This document shows positions 1 to 58,416 of a stretch of DNA of 64,000 nucleotides, piece after piece (positions within the stretch are counted from its first letter, which is position 1; every line of letters starts with the position of its first letter). The notes under the pieces were generated by a model. It was given only the letters and a program-made list of their open reading frames with translations. It searched no databases and had not been told where the DNA came from. The translations under genes and the position numbers were made by a program. Origin of the DNA: Lama guanicoe (Eukaryota); NCBI GenBank assembly GCA_013239625.1, contig MU055744.1:588355-652354 (forward strand), given 5' to 3'.

Positions 1-710
1 TGGCCGCACGTTCCTGAGGCTGGACGTCTGTCTGGGGGGCGTTAGCCCCTTGCGACGACGCGGGGCTGGGCGGGCAGGCCCTGGCACGGCTCACGGGCCC
101 CTCCTCCCCGGCCCGAGCTGTGCTGTTCCTGTCCCACCGACACGCGGCCCTGGGGGGACCACCGCCATGTATTACTCATACCAAGAAGGTTTTAGGAGAG
201 CCTGGGCGCTCATCGACTGGGAAGCACAATTATGGTTTCATCAAAGATGGATTACACATGCGGCTGGTCATTTAAATAACGGCTCTGCTGACACTGTTAA
301 TTGGGTGATAAATGGTCGCACCCCTGTGCCCGGGTCGGCATCAGAGCTGCTCGGAGAGTCGCGGCTGGCCCGTGTCCCCCCCGAAGATCCGGAGGGCGTC
401 GGGGAAGGGCAGGCAGTGCTCAGGCTACAAACTGAGGGTCAAAGGCACCGGACTGGACCTCTCGGCCTAGCCCAGTGTCCACGGCCCTGCAGCTGCCAAG
501 AACTCAGTCGACCTTAAACGTCTCCGTGAGCAACTTAATTTCAATTTAATGAGGCAGAGACTGGGTGTAGTTCAATGTCACTTTATCATTAAAAGCAGAT
601 TGATGGAGGCTGAAGGTCTGAGACAGCCCTACCAGGTGCCTCGAGGTCTTCCTTCCAGAACCGAATGAGCGCTCCAGGCTGCGGGAGCCCAAGGCGGGCG
701 GCCACGGAGG

Positions 711-35347: not shown

Positions 35348-37247
35348 TCTTCCCGGCTCCTCTGCAGCTCTTTTCCCTTCCTTCCGGCGCGGACCGTGCC
35401 GCTTGCGCGGCACAGCTCTGACCACGGGCAGTGCTTCTGAGCGTCTCTGCTGGCTCCTCACCCCTGAGGCTGTGTTTCCGTCTGCACCAGCACCTGTGTT
35501 GTCGTTCCGGCCCCTCCAGCTTCGGCGTCTGTTTCTGCAGCCAGCTCTTTCTGTTTGTTCTTGCAAGGGGCGTCTTTTACCCTCGCGGACCTGGTTGCCT
35601 CCCAGCGCGCTGACACTTAACGTGAGCAACGTGCGCGTCTGCAGAAATCACGTGAGTCCTGGGAGGATGCGCTTCTCCTTCAGAGAAGGTTAGCGTCGGT
35701 TTAGCTGAGGCAGGGGACACGGGCGATCTTGAAGGACCTTAACAGAACCTCAGGAGCTGACGCTTTCTCTTGGGCACTCAGACGTCTCAAAACCAGCTTG
35801 CAGTCCACGCTAAGGCTGGCCAGCGATGGCTCACCCTTATTCCCAGGGGGACCCCTCCTGGATTCTACCCAAACCCGCTCCCCTGACAGACCTTCGACCC
35901 CCGCACCTGACCTTTAGCTCTGCAAAGCTGGCGAGGTGGCCGGCTGGTTTCTCAGCCGTCTTTCGGGGACCGGCATTAAAGAGGCCCCGCGTGCTGGCTT
36001 CCCCCTCCAGGTTCTGTCTCTCCAAGAGCGTAGAAAGAAGCCTTTTTCTACATGGTTGACTTGGCTGTGCCTTCAAGCAAATCACTTTGGTCATGGTTTG
36101 TCGGTTAGTCCTTATGAGAACAGATGGCCCCAAACACCCAACCGCTGCCAGAAGTCAAAGGACTTGTACTGACCCAACTTTCAGACGTCTGAACTTGACA
36201 GACAGGCCCACAGACGCCTAGGGGCGTTACGGTGCTGGCTGACCGTGCTGTCGACACCTCGCCTGCAGTCACTGTGTCACGAAGCAGAGAAGAGGAGGCG
36301 TCCTGGCACGGAACGGGCATGGTCGCAGGTGGGGCTGAAGGGCAGAGAGCTGCTGCCTCTCTCCCCTGCCTGACAGATGGAACCCGGACCTGTCCTGCGG
36401 GGACAGGCCACCCCGTCCAGCAGCTCAGGGAGGCAGAATGGCACCCAAGGCAGTCCAGCTTGTCTGCGCCCTCGGTCTCAGTGGGCTGGAGCCACTGCAC
36501 AGAAATTTGCAAAGTCTGGAGTCACTCCAGTGCCCACAGAGGTGGACCTGAGGTTCCGTGTCCCCTCTTGTGCTAGCCCTCTGGTCTGGCCATGCCCCAC
36601 TTCTTTCGTACTCGGGTGGTTAGTGCGGGTGGAAGGCCAGCCCACGCAGACCAGCCTGGAGAATTCTCAAACCACGGGACAGTTTGCTCTCAGCTCCTCC
36701 CATGGGGTCACCACCTGACTCTCCTTAGTGAGCACTTCTACGCGTCTGCAGAAGCCCTTCAGAAAACGCCCACCTCGTGTTCAGGCTGAGTGCAAGCTTC
36801 GCAGCACACGGTGTGAAGCACAGCCTCTGGGATGTGGGGGGACGGGGCGCAGCCTCATCTTCAGCTGCGGTGAACAGACCTGGTGATCCCCAGAGCGTTA
36901 GGCCTGAGATGACGCCTAGCCCGTTCTCGCTATGTGACGTCAGTTTTCCGCCTGGGAAATCCGAGCGCTAGCGGCTGGCGTGAGTCGTATCTGGCACGTC
37001 AGGGCTCGGAACTTTCTCCCTTCCTTTGTGGTAAGTGCCCAGTGGCTGCCTCAGTCACTGGTGTATTCTGGAACTCAGAGGAGGGAGGGAGCTGTCTTCA
37101 GCCAGCCCTTCCTTATGCCCCGTCGAGGCGCAGGGCGGCGTCTGGGTCTGGCTGGGTGACAGGAAGGGGTGTGCGGGCTGGGCTTTCCTGAGGCCACAGA
37201 CAAGGCCGACACTTTCCCACAGAGGGGTCCTGGGGGCCCTCCTGCCA

Positions 37248-37346
37248 GGGGAAGTGAGCCTGATTCAGCGGGCAGCCCGACGGGGCCCAGCTGGAAGGAG
37301 CGTTTGGCACCTCCTGTTGGGTTAATCCAAGTGCTTGCAGGAAGTG
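37248..37346 (+). promoter_or_regulatory. ETS/PU.1-type motifs upstream of the FCN1-type exon 1
   Basis: GGGGAAGTG at 37248-37256 and CAGGAAGTG at 37338-37346, 70-170 bp upstream of the dead start codon. FCN1-type ficolins are myeloid genes. Confidence 0.5.
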
Positions 37347-37415
37347 GGCGTCCCAGTGGGCACAGACGAGGGTGGCTTCCTCTGCCTGCAGGAGCGAGGT
37401 CGAAGACCAGAGGAC

Positions 37416-37516
37416 ACGCAGCTGAGCGGGTAGCCGTGGCCCCGGGCCCGCTGGCCAGCTCCCCTGGTTCCTGTGCTTCAGGACCCCGGCTGCCCAGGCT
37501 GCCCACACCTGTCCAG
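37416..37516 (+). pseudogene. FCN1: Ficolin (FCN1/ficolin-beta type) exon 1, disabled
   Basis: ACG CAG CTG AGC / RVAVAPGP / AGQLPWFLCFRTPAAQAAHTCP followed by gtgagg. Matches the recalled pig ficolin-beta leader MELSRVAVALGPTGQLLLFLSFQTLAAQAADTCP. Start ATG>ACG and two 1-bp deletions (101 bp vs 103 expected). Opposite strand to COL5A1, as for human FCN1. Confidence 0.85.
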
Positions 37517-38519
37517 GTGAGGCGGACCTGCGTTTCCTGTCCCTGGAAGCTAGTAACTGGCCACTCATTGACCGAGGATAGCATCCCAGGTTAAACTCTC
37601 TCCATGCATCTTCTTCCGAAGACTCTCAACATCTCCGCTTCACCCTCCAGGCCGGGGAGGCCAGGCGCAAGGTCACACAGGTCACACAGGTCTGAGGGGG
37701 AGGGGCGGGGCTTACTCCCAGGTCCGTCTGCTTCTCAAGCCCGCGGCGGCCCCGCGGAGCGTCCCAGCCGGCTCTCAGCTCGGCCTCTGAGGAGGGGGAA
37801 CGCCCCTCCTTTTCTCCTCTGCTCAGGGGCTTTCTGGAAAGACGCCCTTAGAGTGTTCAGTACAGGGGCTCCCGTGCTTACCTGGGGTCCGTGAGCACAG
37901 AAACCTGAATCTGCAGAATCGGGGTCTCAAGGGAGCGTGGCCTCCCTCCGGATCCCACGCAGGCGGAGGGGCCACACTGGAGAGGGACTGACCGTGAGGA
38001 CAGACCAGCCCCTCGTGCCCCCAGGTTGAGGACATATTTACGGAAGGATCGGTGCCCTCCAGCCCGCCCTCTGGGGAGGGAGTCCCAGAAGGCCAGGCAA
38101 GAGAAGCACCCAAGACGCCGCGGCTGGCGTCTCTGGTGACGGCGTGGCCGACCCCGCGGTCTCTACGTCACCTCATGTGAGGATGTTTTACTTTTGAAAT
38201 CAACAAAATCGATTTTTTCCACAGAAGGAAATGCCTGTCTGGTCCCAGTTCTCCTAGAACTTGTTCTGTGCCCTGGGGTCAAATGTGTCCCCTCTCCAGG
38301 GGAACTACATGGACCCCTTCCTGCTCAGGAACTCTGGTCACAGGCCCAAGGTCTGGGGTGAAAATGTTATGTTGACTCCAATTCCCCAAGTTTCTTATAA
38401 ATATTTATTGTTACCATTTATTGAAAGTACCCACTGTTTAGGAAACTCTTTTGAAACGAATTGTACTAGACTTTTAAAGTTTGTGTTATCTAAATCTAAA
38501 TCTCCCCACAGCCCTAGTC

Positions 38520-38640
38520 CTGTCCTCACTTGGGAGCCCAAGGGGCAGAGCTCAGAGAGGTTGAGTGATTTGCCCAAGGACACACAGTACGGGGGGCGGC
38601 CCTCGGGCAAGGCGGACTCCAAGGCCAGGGCTCTGCCCTG
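38520..38640 (+). mobile_element. MIR SINE fragment (similar fragments near 1640-1760, 23860-23960, 31940-32010 and 60170-60240)
   Basis: gagctcagagaggttgagtgatttgcccaaggacacacag core. Confidence 0.65.
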
Positions 38641-39921
38641 TGTCGCCTCCTCACCTGACTACTTTCAAACACAGGTGGGAAAGCCCACTGCCAGGCTGGC
38701 CCTCCAACTGCGACAGGGACACTGGCCGCGGCCCCCGTGCTGAGCGAGAGCGCCCCTGAGCGCTGCGCGCCGTGCGCCCGCCCCCGGAGGGAGTCCGGCG
38801 CCCGCGGCCTGCACCGTCGCTCCCGGGAGCGAGAGCCAGGAGCTCTGGCCTGCGATGGTGCCACTTTCCCTCGCTCCCAGAGTGGGCACACTTGGCGTTT
38901 CTTAAGAGCTGACTTAGCATTCGTTTGCAGAGATGACCGTCCCCCTAAGCACCTCTCTTCTGACCGCTGTCTCCTGCCCAGGACTTTGCAGTTCGGACAC
39001 ACCTGCCTCCACGGCTTGCTCTGTCTGTGGGGTCTCGTAGAAGTGCTTTCCCACAAGCACGGCAATCCACAGAGGGTGCACGCGTCTTTAGCGCAGACGC
39101 TGCACACGAAAGGCTGGAGTCACAGGCCCCCTCGCCACGAAGCGAGTTCAGGTGTATAGCCGGTCGCCGTGCTGACTGGACCCTGATGCGGTGCTTCCTG
39201 GCTCCCCTTTGACCGGGTCGCTCCTGCCTGCGCCCTGAGCAGTGGCCGAGGAGCGGAGGGGGGACTGCGGCCCCTGGAAGCCTGGGCGTGGGGCGGGCGG
39301 GCTCGGCTGCCACCTCTGCCCGCTTGACACGCTCCACGGCTCATCGTCAGAGTCAACAGGAGGCTCCAAAACCCACAGTTTCTAGGCGTCGCCCACTGAG
39401 ATTTTGGTTTCGTGGGTCAGGGACAGGCCCCCGCGTCTACACTGGAAGTGCTCCCGCAGGTGGTTCGGGGACATCCTGGCCCGGAAGCCGCTGTGGCGCT
39501 CGTTTCAGGGCTGAGGGTGCAGTTGGGTGACCTCAGAGCAGAGCTTGCGGGAAGGAGACAGCAGGGCTGCGGGGGGCACGTTTCGGTGCCATCCCAGGGA
39601 CGCAGGAGCTGCAGAGCCAGACGGGTTATCAGCTGAGGGGCCAGAAGTCGCCCAGACCGCTCAGGACGCCTGAGCGTCTCAGACTCAGAAGGTTCCACTT
39701 AGCTCCCTGCTTGTGCACCGAGGGCTGCACAGGGTCACATCGGCACGGCCTTTGCTTGGTGTGGCTTTGTTTTCTGAAGATGCCTTCCATCCTGGGCCCC
39801 GTCTCGGCCACCTGCTGACATAGGCCTTTCTGGGGCTAGCGGGCAGGCAGCCTGGCCGTCCTGCCGCGCGGGCTCTCGGCCCACTCCGAGGAGGAGCTCT
39901 GCGGAGACGTGGGGCTGAGCT

Positions 39922-39935
39922 CCACGAGGGGGCGC
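39922..39935 (+). promoter_or_regulatory. Candidate CTCF site
   Basis: CCACGAGGGGGCGC(TG) is a near-consensus CTCF core. A reverse-oriented TCAGCAGGTGGCCG lies at 39805-39818. Confidence 0.45.
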
Positions 39936-41389
39936 TGCTGAGGTTGGGCACCTGCCCCGCTGCGCTGGTCAGTTGTCCACGGCGGCCGTGAGCATCCTTG
40001 TCGTTAAGAGGAGCCAGGACGGGCGGCCGTCCGGGGCTGTGCAGGTGCTGGTTCTTGCTCTGCGCGAAAGCCTGAGCCGGGCCAGCTGCGCCGTAGTTCC
40101 AGTTCTGAGATTTGATGATTTATATTTCAACCCCAAGTAAAATTTAGAACAGCCCTGTCATCGTGGCAGGCGCAGGATTCTGGTGGGGGGGGGTCGCTCC
40201 CTTGGGACAGATGGAGACTTCCAGATGGCTCCTGGCTCTCCTGCCTTCCCGGCTGGGACTTCTGCCACATACTGGGGTGGGCGGGAAGCTCCAGGAATCA
40301 GATAACTGGCCGCCCCCACGCGTATATCTGATTAGTCACTGTGACAATGCCGAGCACGGCGAGCAGCTCAAGGTGGGCTGAAGAAACTGGGGGAAACTGG
40401 CAGGAGGCGACGTGGGCTGGAAGCCCGGGGTGGGCGTTTGGGGGGAGCACGAGAGCGCGGGTGTCCTCGGCCCCTCCCCACACCCCGTGCCTCACGGAAG
40501 CCTCCTCTTTGTAAAGGTAAGCGACCGCTGACCATTTACCACGCAGCCTTCGTATCTCAGGGCCGCGGTACCGTAGGAGCTTGTCACAGCCGTGCGGAGA
40601 GTGGGTGGCGGGTCCGCCCCGCGGGGACCTGGGAAGCAGACCCCCAGCCGTCCGGCTCCGCCTGTCGGCGATACGGCGCTCACTGCGCTTCGTACCACTT
40701 TACCTCCACGTCTCCCTGCATCCGTCAAGTCAGGGAGGCCTGCCTAGAGCCTCCAGCTCGGGCAGAAAGGATCTGTCCTATTTCCAAGGCTGAGTCGCTC
40801 TGTTCCAGAAAATACTTCGCTGGTCTTTGGAACTCGACGGCTTTAGAAGAAAGTTCTGCCTCTTGCTGTTTGGCGTCCGGAAATGCCCAGGGGTTTTCCA
40901 GCCTCGTACGACCTCAGACTCCCGGGCTCACTGTTTCCTGCCTGCAGGCGGCTCAGCTCTTCCCTAAGCTCCTCTCCTTGTGACGCCCCCCCAGCCCCCG
41001 ACAGCCAGCACCGACAGACACACGCCGCTGAAGGCGCGCATTTGCAGGCTCTCTCCCCGGGCCTGCGGAGCGTGCTCTGGGGACCCGCCTTCCCAGTCAC
41101 CAGGAGCAGCGCCCTGAGCAAGCAAAACTCGCTGGCGCTCCAGCGCCCGCTCCGGCCGCCAGGCTGGTGCCGTGGGGTTCACCCTTGCCGCAGTGGCACT
41201 GCCCCTCTGACGCCAGTTCTGCATCGGACGGCGGTGTGCGACAGCTGCTGGGACAAGCTGCCGTCACACTGCAGCGCAGGGCACACGTGGGTGGGCCGGG
41301 GGCCTGGGGGCTCTGCGCTGGGAGAAGGTGCCAGGGTTTCAGGGGCCAGTCCCACAAGGGGCTGCGTGACCTCTGTCAATCTGCCATCT

Positions 41390-42085
41390 GTACGGGTGCA
41401 GCTGTTACAGAAAACAGCGTGGAGAATCCTGCAACAGCTGAACACAGACTCACCCTGTGGTCCGGCAGCCCCGCTCCCGGGCATACATCCGGAGGGAACT
41501 CTAATCTGAAAAGACACGTGCACCCCAGTGTTCACAGCAGCACTGTTTACAATGGCCAAGACATGGAAGAAACCTCAAAGTCCAGACAGATGACGGGATA
41601 AAGAAGGTCTGGTTATACATATATACAATGGAATACTCCTCAGCCATAAGAAAGAATAAAATAATGCCACTTGCAGCAACTGGGTGGACCCAGAGATGGT
41701 CACACTAAGTGAAGTGAGCCAGACAGAGAAAGACAAACACCATGTGAGATCATACATACGTGGAGTCTAAAACTTGGCGCAAGTGAACTTATTTATAAAA
41801 CAGAAACAGACTCACAGACACAGAGAACAAACTTACAACTGAGGGGGGAGAGGAAGAGGAATGAGTTAGGAGCTTGGGATGAGCAGAGACGAACTACGAC
41901 ACGTAAAACGGGCGGACGGCAAGGTCCTGCTGCGCAGCACAGGGAACTGCATCCCACACCTGGGAATAACCTGTAATGGGAAAGAATACACACGCGTACA
42001 ACTGAATCGCTGTGCTGCGCACCAGGAACTGGCACAACGCTGTGAACCAACTGTGTACCTCAGTAACAGACGGACTAACTAACAG
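41390..42085 (+). mobile_element. LINE-1 3' end, same family as 4597-5160
   Basis: aaaacagcgtggagaatcct...gggcatacatccggagggaactctaat...caatggaatactcctcagccataagaaagaataaaataatgcc...acagaaacagactcacagaca. Confidence 0.9.
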
Positions 42086-42490
42086 AGCCGCTCCGTCCGT
42101 GTTTGCACTTACACGTGGAAGCCAGCCAGGCCGGGCAGGCAGCGGGAGGTGACGGAGTCCTGACTCCTTGAAGGACCTGAACCTCAGGCCGGGTCTAGAA
42201 GAAACACAGGGCGCCCGTCTGCACGAGCCTTTCGCTGACGACGTGTGAGGGGCACCACGGGGAGACGCCTCGTTCCCCCGGCCAGACTGGGCCCTCCTTC
42301 ACGGTGGGAATAAACTCACCTGCGCACCAGAGGGGGCTCTGCAGCCGGTAGGCACTCTGCGAGGTGGGGGGTGGGGTCAGAGCTCGGCTTTGTCTTTCTT
42401 CATTAACTAAGAAAAGAAGCCCCCCCCCCGGCCTTGAGAAGAGAGGGTCCAGGTTTGGGGTTTTCCTCCGTTGCTAATGACTGGGTTACA

Positions 42491-42577
42491 ATTGTTTCTT
42501 GTTGGAGGTACTGGGGATTGAGCCCCGGACCTCATGCACACTAAGCACGTGCTCTACCACTGAGCTACAGCCCCCCC
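42491..42577 (-). mobile_element. tRNA-Ala-derived SINE (camelid Vic-1 type)
   Basis: Minus strand GGGGGGCTGTAGCTCAGTGGTAGAGCACGTGCTTAGTGTGCATGAGGTCCGGGGCTCAATCCCCAGTACCTCCA plus an A-rich tail. A and B boxes are visible; the B box is mutated. Confidence 0.85.
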
Positions 42578-42611
42578 AGGCTGCAGTCTTAATGGCCACT
42601 GAGCCTCCTCT

Positions 42612-42712
42612 CGGGGTGATCAACCATCCTGGTTTGTCCAGGACTGAGGGGTTTCCCAGGAAGTGGGAAGTTTGGTGCTGAAACCTGGAGGACCCAGGGT
42701 GACCAGGACAAG
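42612..42712. mobile_element. MER81-like (hAT-Blackjack) MITE remnant
   Basis: ggggtgatcaaccatcctggtttgtccaggactgaggggtttcccagg...gtgctgaaacc. Confidence 0.6.
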
Positions 42713-42919
42713 GGGCCCCCCGCTCTTCCTGATCATGGGGGCTGGGAGAGGACAGAAAACTTAGGGCAGAAGGCACCTTGTGTGCAGAGGGATGAAAGGA
42801 TGGGGGGCTGAGCCTGAGGTCCTCGGGCAACCACAGTCCTCCGGGGATGGGGTCACTGTCCCACACACACAGCTCCCCCTCTGAAGCGGGCTGGACTCTC
42901 CCACTTTCAGCCACTTCTC

Positions 42920-43200
42920 CCAGTGTCATTTCCAGCTCTTTGCTCCCATTCCTAGGCATGCCCCCTCCTTAGTGCTACAAAGTGCAAAACTCAGACCCCA
43001 GGGCACAGGTGTGGTTTGGCCTGTGCAGAGAGGAGCATGGCTCTCCCCTCCCTCATTCTAGACGCTATGCCTTCATTAATGCAGCCAAAAAGCAAAACAA
43101 GTGTCCCATTTCTGGTGAGCAGCCTCGTGCTCCACCTGGACCCAACTGAGCCTGAAGGTGACCAGGTGGCCCCTTCCAAGTCCTTTTCTTGTAAATCGCC
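42920..43200 (-). mobile_element. CR1/L3 LINE remnant
   Basis: Minus-strand translation FGCINEGIASRMREGRAMLLSAQAKPHL resembles the CR1 ORF2 motif [28 protein letters not shown]. Confidence 0.65.
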
Positions 43201-44780
43201 CTCAAGGCGTTGGATCGTTGGGACAGCTTGTAACCTAGTGGTGAAGAGGAGGGGAGGGGACTGAGATAAGTGGGTTGTGGTGGGCTGGGGCAAGAGTGTC
43301 ATGCTGGTTCCAGGGTCTGGGGCCAGCCACAGCTCCCAAACTTCAGCTTTCTTGGAGGGAGAGGGTGACGCTCCTCAGGCCAGGAGAGAGACGGAGGGAG
43401 CCAGCATCCCTCGTGGGCTCTGACACAAAGGAGGCTGACAGGCTGGCTCCGGCTCTGACCCCACAGGGCACACCCTGGGCACGAGGAAGCAGAGCCTCCG
43501 CTGGGGCCCTGCCCTCTCCAGGGGGTGCTGCCCTCCTGCCTCGTGTCCTCCTGTCCTGTGTCCCAGCTCCCAACACCCTCAACAGAGCAGCCATGGCCCA
43601 GCCTGGGGGAAGGCGCCTGGGCCGTGGAGGGCAGTCCTGGAAGCAGGCAGAGGCTGCTGGGAGGAGGTCTGGGCCAGCTGGGGAGGGGTGGGCGACGCCC
43701 ACGCCCACGGACTCCCCCCACCAAGGTCGTCTGTCCTCCGGTGGCCCCCGCGTGCGTCCGATGCACGTGCACGTATAATACAAGGGGCTTCACTGCCGCA
43801 GGCGGTTGGTTCCACCAGCCCCTTGCTGCCCCAATGACCTTTGGCCGCATTTCTATAAACACTTAAAAAATAAGTCTTGGCAAGTCCTGAAAGCAAAGGA
43901 GTATTTATAAATAAATTACAGCAAGGCTCAAATTAAATACTTACCAAAATCGTTTGAAAAAGAAAAAGCTCCTAGCCCAGCTCCCGGTTACGCAGGTTCT
44001 AAGCTACCGCTGAAGCAGTTTCAGGCCGGCCGCGCTGAGCACGCCTCCGCGGCCGGCGGTGCAGCTCTGCCCCTACGGTAACAGCGCAGCACTTAAGAAA
44101 TCAAGGTTTCTGGAGGGGAGGGTCCTTCCAGGAGAATCCTTCAGGCCTGAAAGGTCGAGGCGCGGGCTGAAGCTCCGGCTGCCTTCCCAGCTGCGCCGGT
44201 GGGCACTGTCTCCTCCGCTGGAGGCGCGGCCTCTGTGAAAGGGAGGTGCAGCGGGCGGGGGGGGCGGCGGCACATGGGGGAGCCCCCGCACCTGATCACC
44301 CCCGACTGTGGGCCCTGGGGTGTCGTGGGCTCTTTGCTGCCCTAGAAGTTTGCGCATCAAACCCAGGGCCGGAGTGGGAGGAGCGACGCACACGCTCAGT
44401 GACGAGCTCCCACACCCATCCGGGCACTGTCATCGCCCCAGGTCCGCAAAAGGACAAAGACGACTGTTCCGCCGTGGGGCCCCCCCGGGCCCTGGAGGGG
44501 AGCGCTTTGGCCCCGCTCTCAGGTTCCGGGGGCAGGAAGGGCCGTCCTCCCCTGCACCAGCTCCCCAGGCCCGCACCGCTCTGTCCTGCCCTGGCTGAGC
44601 GCCAGCACGAGGAGCAAGGGGGGACGGGCTCCGGGGTGAGACGCGCGCCCTCCAGGAAGGGAGGGCACGCCAGGGAACAGGGCTCAACTCTTCCGCTCCC
44701 ACGGGGATGGTGGTGCAGCGCCCCGCGGTCCCTTCCTGGGGAGGGCTCTGGACCAGCTGCCCCCACTGGCCCTGGCCAGC

Positions 44781-45104
44781 CTAGGTGGCCCGCACCTTCA
44801 CCTCCTACCACTTGTAGCTGTGGTTGGGCCCTTTCCCCGACCTCCAGTTGACGTCGTTTGCAAAGTCTTGTGGGGTTCCGCGAGGTAACGGCCGTTCAGG
44901 CTCGACACGTGACAACTGTTGTCCCCCCAGCCCCCCGGTGCTGACACGTGGCGGCCGTGGTCCCCCCAGGCCCCAGGTGCTGACTCGTGACGGCTGTGGT
45001 CCCCCCAGGCCCCAGGTGCTGCTCCGCACAGTTCACATCACTTTTGTCTGTGTCTTTGTCTTTGGTGGAGAAGGCGTGGTTGTTGTGGGACATCAGGGAA
45101 TCGC
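44781..45104 (-). pseudogene. FCN2: Ficolin (FCN2 type) terminal exon 8 equivalent, disabled
   Basis: cttttccag|DSLMSHNNHAFSTKDKDTDKSDVNCAEQH...NSCHVSSLNGRYLAEPHK.FANDVNWRSGKGPNHSYKW*EVKVRAT*. Frameshifts, an internal 39-bp triplication and a premature TAG. CHV, FAN and terminal RAT resemble recalled FCN2/pig ficolin-alpha. Confidence 0.93.
44905..45021. repeat. 39-bp x3 tandem repeat inside ficolin pseudo-exon 8
   Basis: Units at 44905-44943, 44944-44982 and 44983-45021, each close to acacgtgrcggcygtggtccccccaggccccaggtgctg. Confidence 0.92.
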
Positions 45105-45630
45105 CTGGAAAAGCGGCCCCACAGGCACTCAGGGCTAGGAAGTCCTGGGTGCTGGGTCCAGGTCAGGGCTGTCATGTCCAGGGCTGCCACCCCCACGACC
45201 CCAGTGAACACCCTCTGCTGACACAGTCGCCCTGGGACCCCCTCATCGGTCTGCCGCTGCCGGCTAAGGGCACCCTTCCACTCGGATGGGGGCCACTGTG
45301 GCCCAGGAGCTCGTCCGCTCCTCAGGCAGAGCCCCAGGGCCGGAGGAGGGAGCCCTCAGGGGGGCGTGCCGACTTGCCATCCTTCCGCGTCTTCATCAGG
45401 GCTGGTGATAAACAGTAACGCCCCCGCCTGCTGGGCTTTGCGCATCACCCTCATGGGTGCACTTGGGAGTACACCGTGTCACCTCATCATGTGGATTCAG
45501 GCGCTGGCGGTGCTCCGTGCCCGCCACCATCTCAGAAGAGGCAGAGCCGGGACCCTGAGCGGGCTCCCTCTGCTCCCCGGGCCCGGAGCCGCACCGCAGC
45601 CCAGGCCACCGCGCCCCATGCAGACCTCGC

Positions 45631-45763
45631 CTGCCCCGCCCCGGACAAAGGCCCCAGGACCAGCCTGCGCGTCTCCGCCTCGCTCGCCATCTTGAACGCC
45701 TGCTACTGGCAAGTTGGCGGTTGCCCTCCAATTCCATGAGGCCCACCCGGAGCTCACTGGTGC
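45631..45763 (-). pseudogene. FCN2: Ficolin (FCN2 type) exon 7 equivalent, disabled
   Basis: ttccgacag|GTSELRVGLMELEGNRQLA..*QAFKMASEAETRRLVLG..FVRGGA. Two 1-bp deletions (133 vs 135 bp), Tyr TAC>TAG, and donor GT>GC. Confidence 0.92.
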
Positions 45764-46574
45764 CTGTCGGAAGGAGGTTTTCAGGGCCCAGCAGAGGCGC
45801 CTCTGCCTCCAGGCGTGGGAGATGGGAATCTGGGTAAACTCCTAAGCAATGTCTGAACTTGGCTTCCAGGGGAACTTCCTGCAAGTTCATGTAGAAGGTC
45901 CCGGTTATACGAGGGATGGACGAAGCCCACTTCCCACGGGTCCTCCCGCCACACCTGAAATTCCTCTCGCGTATTCATTTGACGGACACGTCACACTACC
46001 TCCAAAGCACGCGTTTTCCGGGACTGGCCTGCGGAGGGCTCACGGCCCACGCAGGGGGGCCGCCTTAGTCTTTCCTTTACCCGGGGAGGCCCAGCACGCA
46101 CTCGATGGGGCGGCTCAGGTGTCGGGCGTGGGGCCCTGGAGGGGAGGAGCCAGGCGGTTTTGCTGCCTGCCCAGGACCCGTCACAGGCCGGCGCCCCCGC
46201 CGTCTTCTCCCCGGGGCTGTGCAGAGTTGTGTTCTTGGGGGCTGACAGAGGACAGGGGCTGGAGACAAATCTCTCTTCCCTGAGCCTCAGCCTCTAAGGG
46301 AAGACCTGGTGGGACGTGGAATCAGGGCTGGGGTGGGGCCCAAGCGGCAGTGGCCCAGTCCCTCCTGTCCTGGGTTCTAAGACGCCAGTGGCACCGTGGC
46401 TGGACGAAGTCTTCACCCCAGGGTCCTCACGCTCTGACCCTCGTGTTCTGAGGGACTATGGTTGGCGCAGCTGTGACACTGTCCGCTGTCAGGGGGGCCC
46501 CGGGGGGCACTGAGGAGCCGGCTCCTCTGTGCGCAATGGCCCAGGTCTAAGGGCAGGGCAGGTGGGTTCCAGAC

Positions 46575-46615
46575 CCCCAGGACCACAGACCCCGGCCGGG
46601 GCTCTGCTGGAAATC
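46575..46615 (-). pseudogene. FCN2: Remnant start of the ficolin exon 6 equivalent (VFQRR...)
   Basis: ccctcccgcccag|GAT TTC CAG CAG AG resembles GTT TTC CAG CGG AG. Similarity is lost after ~40 bp, so most of the exon appears deleted. Confidence 0.45.
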
Positions 46616-46785
46616 CTGGGCGGGAGGGAGGGGGCTGGGGACACGGGGCCCTGCTGCCCCCCCGGCCCCAGGGGCCTCGGCCGCACGTGATCTCCCCGCA
46701 GGTGGAGAAGCCGGTAGGTGAGACTTCCTGGCCCGGCCCCCTCTGGCCCAGGACCACACGGCCGTCTCGGGGACCCCCAACTCAT

Positions 46786-46911
46786 GGTCCACCCCCCGCC
46801 GTCCGTGTCCATGTCACAGCACGGTCAGGGGACAGCAGCCGGGCAGGTAGATGGTGTGCCAGCCACTCAGGAAGTGTCCCCTGGTGAGCAGCTCTTCACA
46901 GGTCCCAGGTC
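46786..46911 (-). pseudogene. FCN2: Ficolin (FCN2 type) first fibrinogen-domain exon (FCN2 exon 5 equivalent), disabled
   Basis: cttcccag|[42 protein letters not shown] 2-bp deletion in the LCD codons (126 vs 128 bp) gives an immediate TGA, and the donor has changed from GT to AT (acc|atgagt). Confidence 0.93.
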
Positions 46912-47159
46912 CTGGGAAGGGAAGCCGGGAAGCGGAGGCCAGGCCAGGAGCCCCGGGCAGGGCAGGGGCAGCAGGGGGTGAGGGGGAGAACAGAGACACC
47001 TGCACGGGTGGAGGAGGACTCTGAGGCCTGGGACAGGGATGTGTGTGGTGAGGATTTACCTGGATCGGGCTGGGCAGCTGGCTTCTGGTGGGGAGAGGAG
47101 TGCGGGAGCCAGGCCAGGGCATCCCAAAGGGGTGGCGCCCTGAGACTTTGAGGAAAGAC

Positions 47160-47190
47160 CAGTAGTGTGTCAGATTGCAGCTGCTCCGGC
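47160..47190 (-). pseudogene. Possible ficolin neck mini-exon remnant
   Basis: ccccacag|gccggagcagctgcaatctgacacactactg|gt, 31 bp. PEQLQS resembles the recalled pig ficolin neck EPGQLQSCATG, at the expected position upstream of exon 5. Confidence 0.35.
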
Positions 47191-47398
47191 CTGTGGGGCA
47201 TGGAGGTGGGGCTGGGGTCGGGGAGGGGCATTAAACTGACCCCCGGAGGCCACTGACCCCTGCCCCAGGAGGGACCAGGCTGGGTGATTTTCCCATACTT
47301 CTTAAGGAAGAGTCAGATCCTGGAACCAGCTGTTACCCGGAGTCCCAGTAGAGATGGAGGTGGCAGGTCCGGGCCCCACCCCACCCCCGGCAGCCCCT

Positions 47399-48138
47399 GT
47401 CCGGCTGTGGAGTTGGCATCAGGACCCCAAGTCATGAAAGTCACGTGAGCATCGAGGGTCCATCGGAGACCACACCAGTGTCCAGGGGCGTGAGGCCCGG
47501 GACTATGGCAGCTGCTCAGAGATGCTTGCTCTCAGGGGAGGAAGAGTAGCTCTCCCTCCGCCCTGCGTTCTCAGCTGCGCCCCCGTAAACCAAGGCAGAG
47601 CAGCCAGCGAAACGCGCAGAGAAGCTTCCTCGCACGTCCACCTTGGTCCACGCCAGCGGAGTCACGGGGGAACGAGTGGCCCCCGGGGGCTGAGAATCCG
47701 GGTCTCAGCACCTTCTCGGCGGGGAGGGCGGGCAGGCCTCCTGGGCGGCGGCGGCGGCGTGGGGCCTTTGTGGGGCCTTTGTGGGGCCTGCCCGCCGCAG
47801 TGCCGCCTCTCGTCTCCTGTGTCGTGACGAGTCAGTCTTCCTGGTGGATGAAAGTCCGGGGACGGGCCGACAACCCGACTCCCTTCAGACGGGAATGAAG
47901 AGATTGCAGCCGCCCCGAGTGAGGGGAGGGAGCCCAGGACGCAGACGAGCAGGCAGCCCGGCCCCTGCAGGCCCCCTCGGCGCCCCCTGGGGGCTCAGGG
48001 TGGGAAGGCACCGGGCGCGGCCCTGGGCGGCACAGGGGCGGATCAGAGGAGGGACTTCAGTGGCCCAGGCCTTTGCCCCTTCCCGCACACAGACGAGCCC
48101 TCAGTTCCTGAACCTGGGGCCCCCGGTCTTTAATTAAC
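47399..48138 (-). mobile_element. ERV-type LTR-like element directly upstream of the FCN2-type exons
   Basis: gcagctgctcagagatgcttgctct...cagttcctgaacctggggcccccggtctttaattaaca, an MER41-like reverse LTR layout. Confidence 0.45.
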
Positions 48139-48679
48139 ACCCGTCTGTTCACGCTCCGACTCCCTGGCCTTTGTGGCAAAGCCTCCTGTGCATCCTGGCT
48201 CCTCCCCTGCCTCTTCGGAGCGGTCCCTCGGGGCCACCTGAGAGGCCTCTCCTGGGCTTGAGCCCTGCAGACGAAACACCCTCAGCCCTTAGGCTGCGTT
48301 GTTTAGCAGGCGTGAGGATCTGTCTTCAGGCAGATGGAGGGAGCTCAGAGAAAGCCTCTCCCGGCGTCTGCTGCTTGTCGAGTACCCACAGCTCAAAACG
48401 GTCACCTTGTGGAGCACTAGGCACTCCCGCAGCTCAGCGTCAGCTCTGCTCAACGCGCCCAAGTGCTGTGTTTGGAGGGGGGCGTCCCACTGCCCGGACA
48501 GGCAAGGGGAACCCGGGACGTGGCCTCCCCTGGGCGGGGGCAGGACACACCGCAGGGAGGCCCCGCAGAGCCGGGGCTGGAGGGGCCCTCCGCACCCGGG
48601 CCACGTGCGTCGGGACTGCCCACTTGGCGGGCTGTGAGCGTCTCGCCCAGTGCGGGCAGGTGAGAAGCTGACATGCACG

Positions 48680-49260
48680 GTGTTACTATTTCAGCATAAA
48701 AATTGATGTCAATTTGTTAACTTGGGAGTTGGCATAATTTAAGAGAGTCTGGCCTTGGAGTAACAACCTGATAATCTAGTTGAAAATGTGACCTTGAGCA
48801 ACGGGACGATTTTACGTGGGAATCTTGCCGCGTTTACAGTTTGTTGTTCAGAGACCCCCGAGCCATCCCGTTCGCAGGTTTACATTAGCAGATTTCTAAA
48901 AATTAGCTTAGACTCGGAAGCTCTCGTCAAAGGCAGACAACCTGGCAAACACAAATTTGTATATATCCAAGTTGAAAATGCAATTAAAATGTTTAAAGCT
49001 GTTAACTGAGTCAATGAGTGAAGCAAAAATTATCTGTAAGCCTCTGCAAAGTTTATTAAAATGTGCCTGGGCCCTCATGCCTGGCCCGAAATAAGTGCCT
49101 GTTACGTGTAGCATACGGTTCATAAGCGCAGCTTGAAAGCTTAAGGAACCAGTGGACTTCTGAATTCACAAGTTTAATAAATTGAACAAATTGCACGCGG
49201 ATTAATTTTAAAAGGTGGTAGCACACTGAGTAATCTCTGCACAAGAAGGGAAACCAAAAC
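48680..49260. mobile_element. AT-rich block, probable hAT/Charlie-type DNA transposon remnant
   Basis: Sharp compositional island with an LTR-like element nearby on each side; cttaaggaaccagtggacttctgaattcacaag resembles recalled Charlie internal sequence. Confidence 0.3.

Positions 49261-58245: not shown

Positions 58246-58416
<171 letters not shown>

What the first reader, a model, noticed from the sequence alone, without database searches (positions are those of the whole stretch)
37416..47190. The whole COL5A1-linked ficolin locus is pseudogenised: probable loss of these lectin-pathway receptors in this (camelid-like) lineage
Seen: every recognisable ficolin exon carries disabling lesions. 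Exon 1 has ATG>ACG and two frameshifts; exon 5 has a 2-bp deletion and GT>AT donor; exon 6 is mostly gone; exon 7 has two deletions, TAC>TAG and a GT>GC donor; exon 8 has frameshifts, a triplication and a stop. No collagen-domain exons were recognised. Established: this syntenic position holds FCN2 and FCN1 in human, and ficolins recruit MASPs to trigger the lectin complement pathway. Inference: so many independent lesions indicate an old loss rather than sequencing error, so this animal may rely on MBL/collectins or other ficolin loci. I do not know whether this loss has been reported.
Basis: partly seen in the sequence, partly recalled or inferred. Interest (0 to 1): 0.8.

Follow-up and report, generated by a model that had tools for sequence, protein, structure and literature searches.

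The report
Two dead ficolin genes beside COL5A1
Downstream of COL5A1 this (reportedly camelid) genome holds only broken remnants of the two ficolin genes that normally sit there, so this locus makes no ficolin, but I could not show that the whole lineage lacks these complement-activating lectins.

Summary
They belong to two genes, not one. On the + strand at 37339-37516 lie the 5'UTR and exon 1 of an FCN1-type gene. Its start codon is ACG and it carries two 1-nt deletions. On the - strand lie exons 5, 7 and 8 of an FCN2-type gene at 46911-44781. They carry a TG loss, AT and GC splice donors, a TAG in place of TAC, several 1-nt deletions, a tripled 39-nt unit and a premature TAG.

COL5A1 ends at 58249 on the - strand. 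The layout therefore matches the human order: COL5A1, FCN2, then FCN1 in convergent orientation. A profile of 67 ficolins finds no other ficolin exon anywhere in the 64 kb: no collagen-domain exons, no significant exon 6 and no FCN1 exons 2-9.

Independent runs hold 91-97% of the sampled words of this stretch.

Lineage-wide loss is not shown. No camelid ficolin appeared in the protein searches, but those lists are not exhaustive. One Bactrian camel liver atlas names FCN1 as an expressed gene. FCN3 was not tested.

Ficolin losses are already known (FCN3 in rodents, FCN2 in ruminants), so this is a new member of a known kind.

The parts
37339..37415 (+). Upstream/5'UTR stretch of the FCN1-type gene remnant
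   Evidence: tblastn of the pig model P0008, whose N-terminal extension is translated upstream sequence, aligns from 37339 on (43.5 bits, E=2e-7 together with exon 1).
37416..37516 (+). Exon 1 (signal peptide) of the FCN1-type ficolin gene: start codon ACG, two 1-nt deletions, donor GT kept at 37517-37518
   Evidence: Three-frame reading. Local alignment scores are 75-103 to FCN1-type N-termini of dolphin, pig and sheep, against 30-52 to laurasiatherian FCN2-type N-termini. DNA read.
46786..46911 (-). Exon 5 (start of the fibrinogen-like domain) of the FCN2-type gene: TG dinucleotide lost near 46817, donor AT at 46785-46784
   Evidence: PDB ficolin-2 and ficolin-1 chains, E=3e-12. HMM 50.2 bits, E=2.5e-14. 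DNA read. Frameshift placed by the alignment.
46545..46617 (-). Possible vestige of exon 6, after a good acceptor (...cccag|G); not statistically supported
   Evidence: Read by eye. The frameshift-aware alignment of the exon 6 peptide to 45800-46782 scored 23 against a shuffle mean of 28, so exon 6 counts as lost.
45631..45763 (-). Exon 7 of the FCN2-type gene: 1-nt deletion in the Lys codon (45707-45706), TAG for TAC (45705-45703), 1-nt deletion near 45652, donor GC (45630-45629)
   Evidence: HMM 11.3 and 7.1 bits in two frames. tblastn 31.2 and 21.9 bits. DNA read. Alignment.
44781..45104 (-). Exon 8 (last coding exon) of the FCN2-type gene: 39-nt unit tripled, 1-nt deletions near 44937 and 44865, premature TAG at 44807-44805, native stop at 44783-44781
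   Evidence: Pfam Fibrinogen_C E=2.2e-5. HMM 35.2, 20.8 and 19.8 bits in three frames. DNA read. Best match is to cetacean FCN2-type proteins.
44904..45021 (-). Tandem triplication of 39 nt inside exon 8, covering the conserved ...QGAWWY.NCHVS... segment
   Evidence: TRF: period 39, 3.0 copies, 87% matches. The copies differ at 3, 6 and 7 of 39 positions.
47166..47197 (-). Possible vestige of the short linker exon 4; not statistically supported
   Evidence: PEQLQSDT against EPGQLQSCAT, flanked by AG and GT, but the score of 17 equals the shuffle mean.
58249..58416 (-).
   Evidence: Pfam COLFI E=3.5e-17, profile positions 187-233 of 233. The peptide ends ...[12 protein letters not shown] followed by a stop. 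Scan notes place exon 64 beyond the window's end.

Best explanation
The window holds the ancestral ficolin locus in its usual layout. COL5A1 is on the - strand. The FCN2 orthologue follows on the same strand. The FCN1 orthologue lies further on, on the opposite strand, convergent with FCN2.

Both ficolin genes are dead. Recognisable pieces of the FCN2 orthologue are exons 5, 7 and 8, each disabled by frameshifts, stops, broken donors and an internal triplication. Its promoter, signal-peptide exon and collagen exons are gone, and exon 6 is no longer recognisable. Of the FCN1 orthologue only the upstream stretch and exon 1 remain, with ACG for ATG and two frameshifts. Exons 2-9 are missing from the roughly 7 kb where they should lie.

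Shown: the positions, strands, paralogue type and lesions of the pieces, and the absence of other ficolin exons in the 64 kb.

Inferred: each gene lost its missing exons by deletion. The loss is old, tens of millions of years. This locus yields no ficolin able to bind MASPs (no collagen stalk) or acetylated ligands (broken fibrinogen-like domain).
For: - **Identity of the pieces.** PDB ficolin-2/-1 match, Pfam Fibrinogen_C, tblastn, and a 67-sequence ficolin HMM against six frames.
- **Lesions.** Read on the DNA, placed by the frameshift-aware alignment, with the triplication.
- **Two genes, not one.** Exon 1 scores 75-103 against FCN1-type N-termini (proteins with a SYANG-type C-terminus) and 30-52 against laurasiatherian FCN2-type N-termini. 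Exons 7-8 score best against cetacean FCN2-type proteins, 402-424 against at most 364 for FCN1-type. They also carry the FCN2 signatures CHVS, FAN, SGKG and KVRAT.
- **Orientation.** The COLFI end of the collagen gene lies at 58249-58416 on the - strand.
- **Nothing else.** No other ficolin exon appears by HMM or by DNA self-comparison.
- The window has no N. Twenty runs of five organism labels in nine studies hold 0.80-0.97 of the sampled 31-mers of 44700-47300. Runs under three other organism labels, from three other studies, hold 0.91-0.96. That leaves room for only a few point differences, against at least 10 lesions in the stretch.
Against:
The deletions are therefore inferred from absence; breakpoints were not seen.
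- The exon 4 and exon 6 vestiges are not significant.
- Paralogue typing rests on short peptides. Gene conversion between ficolin paralogues is known in other lineages and could blur it.
Confidence: 0.85

Rival explanations
1. The remnants are real, but the animal is not ficolin-deficient. A working FCN1/FCN2-type gene survives outside this window, as a further copy in the cluster or a relocated one. The remnants are then decayed neighbours rather than the last copies.
For: A Bactrian camel liver snRNA-seq atlas lists FCN1 among genes over-expressed in monocyte-like Kupffer cells, using the NCBI annotation of Ca_bactrianus_MBC_1.0 (PMC13647604). Cetaceans carry more than two ficolin genes, annotated ficolin-1, ficolin-1-like and ficolin-2-like. 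Only 64 kb of this genome was examined.
Against: The two remnants occupy the two ancestral positions, in the ancestral orientation. No camelid protein is among the best 120 of 2049 relatives of the pig FCN1 fibrinogen-like domain, a list that includes cetaceans, hippo, ruminants, pig, rhino, bats, pangolin, carnivores and primates down to 80% identity. None is among the 109 N-terminal relatives either. No paper in the library reports a camelid ficolin protein. All of this is absence of evidence.
Confidence: 0.3
2. One ficolin gene was broken by an inversion. Exon 1 (+ strand) and exons 5-8 (- strand) were once parts of the same gene, and the other paralogue was deleted entirely.
For: The geometry allows it: exon 1 at 37.4 kb on +, then exon 8 to exon 5 from 44.8 to 46.9 kb on -. 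The same reader raised this in a twin note.
Against: Exon 1 is FCN1-type and exons 7-8 are FCN2-type. In every laurasiatherian protein retrieved, the N-terminal type and the C-terminal type go together. Exons 5-8 already have the strand and position expected of FCN2 relative to COL5A1, so no inversion is needed.
Confidence: 0.05
3. The lesions are assembly or sequencing errors in a GC-rich, homopolymer-rich stretch, and the genes are intact in the animal.
For: Several of the 1-nt deletions lie in G-runs.
Against: Errors do not produce missing exons, a diverged tripled unit, nonsense substitutions, changed splice donors, or 25-30% amino-acid replacement at residues conserved in all ficolins. 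Independent runs of other organism labels share 0.91-0.96 of the sampled words. The window has no gaps.
Confidence: 0.03

Closest known systems
FCN2 erosion in ruminants (goat, sheep, Tibetan antelope, cow), Turakhia et al. 2020, PMC7498332
   Same: A lineage-specific loss of a ficolin gene at the same COL5A1-linked locus within Cetartiodactyla.
   Different: Ruminants keep an FCN1-type gene (sheep P0099 and cattle P0104). Here the FCN1-type gene is also reduced to a broken exon 1. Camelids are not listed for FCN2 in that paper's main tables.
FCN3 (H-ficolin) pseudogene of rodents
   Same: Loss of one ficolin in a mammalian lineage while the lectin pathway persists through other recognition molecules. 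The abstract of PMC3240626 states only that rodents have two ficolins, A and B; that mouse Fcn3 is a pseudogene is my own knowledge.
   Different: A different locus and paralogue. Rodents retain two FCN1/2-type genes; here both genes of that type at the locus are dead.
Intact FCN1/FCN2 pair of pig and cetaceans (pig FCN1 P0039, pig second ficolin P0064, grey whale ficolin-2 P0075, dolphin ficolin-1 P0072)
   Same: The window's pieces are their orthologues by sequence type. Exon 1 resembles the dolphin and pig FCN1 signal peptide. Exons 7-8 resemble whale ficolin-2.
   Different: Those genes encode complete proteins of 323-329 residues with a signal peptide, a collagen stalk and a fibrinogen-like domain. 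The window's copies lack the collagen exons and cannot be read through.

Membership tests
Ficolin (FCN1/FCN2 type), functional gene | C-terminal fibrinogen-like domain (Pfam PF00147) encoded without interruption | tested here: not met
   Only pieces match: Pfam E=2.2e-5 for one fragment and HMM hits spread over three frames. Frameshifts and stops occur in exons 5, 7 and 8, and exon 6 is undetectable.
Ficolin (FCN1/FCN2 type), functional gene | Collagen-like Gly-X-Y stalk (PF01391) that carries the MASP-binding site | tested here: not met
   No collagen-domain exon next to either remnant. In the collagen part of the HMM there are only noise-level hits of at most 8.8 bits anywhere in the window.
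Ficolin (FCN1/FCN2 type), functional gene | Signal peptide exon with a start codon, in frame | tested here: not met
   The FCN1-type exon 1 has ACG for ATG, two frameshifts and three Leu-to-Pro changes in the hydrophobic core. No FCN2-type exon 1 was found.
Ficolin locus (orthology by position) | Lies downstream of COL5A1, with FCN2 on the COL5A1 strand and FCN1 convergent to it, as in human | tested here: met
The COLFI end is at 58249-58416 on the - strand. FCN2-type exons lie on the - strand at 46911-44781 and FCN1-type exon 1 on the + strand at 37416.
Unitary pseudogene (loss without a surviving functional copy) | No intact copy elsewhere in the genome | not testable with these tools
   Only the window could be searched. 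Protein searches found no camelid ficolin but are not exhaustive. PMC13647604 names FCN1 as expressed in Bactrian camel.
Unitary pseudogene (loss without a surviving functional copy) | Lesions fixed in the species and shared with relatives | tested here: inconclusive
   Word shares of 0.80-0.97 in 20 runs of five organism labels imply that most lesions are shared among close relatives. Per-lesion checking was impossible.

The most novel reading that the evidence does not exclude
All living camelids lack every FCN1/FCN2-type ficolin. Both genes died in the camelid stem lineage, and the 'FCN1' named in camel expression data is a transcribed remnant or another gene. Camelids would then be natural double knockouts, whose lectin pathway runs on MBL, collectins and perhaps FCN3 alone.
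Probability: 0.35. Interest if true: 0.6.

Novelty: new member of a known kind. Interest (0 to 1): 0.45.

Why it matters
Ficolins are one of the two classes of recognition molecules that start the lectin pathway of complement. FCN1 is also a standard monocyte marker.

A mammal with both COL5A1-linked ficolin genes dead would be a natural double knockout. It could be used to ask how far MBL, collectin-10/11 and FCN3 can stand in for them.

It also bears on camelid immunology. A 2026 review says the camelid complement system is barely studied (PMC13343275).

On the practical side, FCN1 may not be a usable monocyte marker in these animals, and 'FCN1' labels in camelid data sets need checking.

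If a working copy exists elsewhere, the finding shrinks to an ordinary pair of decayed gene fragments.

Tried and rejected
- **Outgroup DNA.** All lesion calls are therefore protein-guided.
- **Protein search on the lineage-specific exon 7 stretch.** No hits.
- **Exact look-up of ten window ORFs.** None is in the collection.
- **Species of the odd exon 5 relatives.** They are pangolin and Myotis, not camelid.
- **Retrocopy idea.** The sequence right after exon 1 looked like exon 2. The similarity is chance: 32 of 200 shuffles reach it.
- **Exon 4 vestige at 47197-47166.** Not significant.
- **Exon 6 vestige at 46617-46545.** Not significant.
- **Apparent collagen-like hit at 44823-44728.** It overlaps exon 8 in another frame, so it was taken as noise from G/P-rich sequence.
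- **DNA self-comparison for paralogous ficolin exons in the window.** None found.
- **Literature.** No report of camelid ficolin loss or of a camelid ficolin protein. The supplements of two papers were not held.
Full report
**What is there**

The window has no gaps. On the - strand an open stretch ending at 46817 matches the first 33 residues of the fibrinogen-like domain of human ficolin-2 and ficolin-1 crystal chains (E=3e-12).

I used that exon alone, by reference, to fetch ficolin proteins. A word search with the pig protein then gave full-length named references. These were pig ficolin-1 (P0039), the second pig ficolin (P0064), grey whale ficolin-2 (P0075), dolphin ficolin-1 (P0072), sheep (P0099) and hippo (P0071).

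Three searches covered the window: tblastn, a profile HMM built from 67 full-length ficolins and run against all six frames, and a frameshift-aware protein-to-DNA alignment of my own. All give the same picture.

| Piece | Strand | Coordinates | Support |
|---|---|---|---|
| Exon 5 | - | 46911-46786 | E=2.5e-14 |
| Exon 7 | - | 45763-45631 | weak, split over two frames |
| Exon 8 | - | 45104-44781 | E=9.3e-10, 2.3e-5, 4.6e-5 in three frames |
| Exon 1 plus upstream stretch | + | 37339-37516 | E=2e-7 |

Nothing else in the 64 kb resembles a ficolin exon. A DNA self-comparison finds no paralogous copy.

**The lesions**

- **Exon 1.** It starts with ACG. The match runs through three reading frames, which means two 1-nt deletions. 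Three leucines of the signal-peptide core have become proline.
- **Exon 5.** It has lost a TG just before the [11 protein letters not shown] segment, and its donor reads AT.
- **Exon 7.** It lacks one base in a Lys codon, has TAG where relatives have TAC, lacks a G in a G-run, and has a GC donor.
- **Exon 8.** It contains a 39-nt unit three times (TRF), two 1-nt deletions and a TAG eight codons before the native stop. The conserved WW-Y segment reads W-G-D.
- **Exon 6.** It cannot be detected above chance.
- **Exon 4.** A possible vestige of this linker exon is no better than chance.
- **Collagen exons.** None are present.

**Two genes, not one**

In all laurasiatherian ficolins I retrieved, the type of signal peptide and the type of C-terminus go together.

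- FCN1-type proteins have an N-terminus of the form MELS...LGP.GQLLL...AAQ.ADTCP and the motifs ...CHSS... and ...SYANG... near the C-terminus. In most cetartiodactyls the C-terminus ends ...RLT.
- FCN2-type proteins have an N-terminus of the form ME.RGVA...GPAVLA...APDTCP and the motifs ...CHVS..., ...SFANG... and ...SGKG... near the C-terminus. In cetartiodactyls it ends ...RAT.

The window's exon 1 scores 75-103 against FCN1-type N-termini and 30-52 against laurasiatherian FCN2-type N-termini. Its exons 7-8 score highest against cetacean FCN2-type proteins, 402-424 against at most 364, and they carry all four FCN2 signatures.

The last coding exon of the fibrillar collagen gene lies at 58249-58416 on the - strand (COLFI, E=3.5e-17). 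Scan notes place COL5A1 exon 64 just beyond the window's end.

The layout is therefore COL5A1 (-), FCN2 remnant (-), FCN1 remnant (+). From my own knowledge, this is the human arrangement, with FCN2 and FCN1 convergent.

**How it came about (inference)**

- The FCN2 orthologue lost its promoter and exons 1-3, and probably exon 4.
- The FCN1 orthologue lost exons 2-9.
- The roughly 7 kb between 37517 and 44780 holds no ficolin sequence. It does hold a tRNA-like element at 42503-42575.

The decay looks old:

- About 8 indel events lie in about 510 bp of exons 5, 7 and 8.
- Identity to whale ficolin-2 in exon 8 is 71%, where the pig and whale proteins share 83% (counted).
- The three 39-nt copies differ from each other at 3, 6 and 7 positions.

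With usual mammalian neutral rates this points to tens of millions of years. The numbers are small and the sequence is rich in CpG, so this is a rough inference, not a date.

**Is it an artefact?**

There was one slip: a local ARAGORN tRNA scan was given the range 36000-49000 by reference, which contains those places. It reported nothing there.

Twenty runs of five organism labels in nine studies hold 0.80-0.97 of the sampled 31-mers of 44700-47300. Runs under three other organism labels, from three other studies, hold 0.91-0.96. One point difference removes about 1.2% of the words, so these samples can differ from the window at only a few sites, while the stretch carries at least ten lesions. 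Missing exons, nonsense substitutions and a diverged triplication are also not the kind of thing sequencing errors produce.

**Does the lineage lack ficolins?**

This is not settled.

Evidence pointing towards loss:

- The best 120 of 2049 relatives of the pig FCN1 fibrinogen-like domain include cetaceans, hippo, ruminants, pig, rhino, bats, pangolin, carnivores, armadillo and primates down to 80% identity, but no camelid.
- The 109 relatives of the N-terminal 48 residues include no camelid either. That list also omits species, such as dog and horseshoe bats, whose ficolin-2 proteins appear, so it is not exhaustive.
- No protein model carries the window's version of exon 7.
- No paper in the library reports a camelid ficolin or its loss.
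- A 2026 review says camel complement is barely studied (PMC13343275).

Evidence against:

- A snRNA-seq atlas of Bactrian camel liver lists FCN1 among genes over-expressed in monocyte-like Kupffer cells, with reads aligned to the NCBI genome Ca_bactrianus_MBC_1.0 (PMC13647604).
- This could mean that Old World camels keep a working FCN1. It could also be a copy outside this window, or a gene model built on the surviving promoter and exon 1.

FCN3 was not tested at all.

That the genome is a llama/alpaca-type camelid comes only from other agents' notes. I did not verify it.

**Comparison with what is known**

Ficolin repertoires vary among mammals. Turakhia et al. 2020 list FCN2 erosion in goat, sheep, Tibetan antelope and cow, but not in camelids (PMC7498332). 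Rodents have only two ficolins, A and B (abstract of PMC3240626); that their Fcn3 is a pseudogene is my own knowledge. Ruminants keep an FCN1-type gene.

The new element here is that both genes at the locus are dead in one genome. I class it as a new member of a known kind, of moderate interest. Interest rises if the whole-genome searches confirm that no FCN1/2-type gene remains.

Exons were searched one by one, by reference, and the joined step was left out.

Noticed in passing
window 42503-42575 (- strand): A tRNA-like element (ARAGORN tRNA-Thr AGT; Rfam tRNA, 46 bits, E=2e-7) inside the interval where FCN1 exons 2-9 should be. It may be a tRNA gene or the head of a tRNA-derived SINE.
   Followed up: partly
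window about 41180-42050 (- strand): Open frames with peptides such as ...IVNSAAVNTGVHVSF..., which I recall from the C-terminal end of mammalian L1 ORF2. Pfam gave no hit, so this rests on memory only.
   Followed up: partly
window 58249-58416 (- strand): The last coding exon of the fibrillar collagen gene is intact (COLFI, E=3.5e-17). The gap from this exon to the ficolin-2 remnant is only about 11 kb. From memory, the human COL5A1-FCN2 distance is much larger, which fits loss of sequence here.
   Followed up: partly
proteins P0009, P0010, P0030 (Manis) and P0020 (Myotis brandtii), not in the window: The pangolin and Brandt's bat ficolin models in public databases are truncated or read into introns and lack the last exon. 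These may be further lineages with decaying ficolin genes, or just poor gene models.
   Followed up: no
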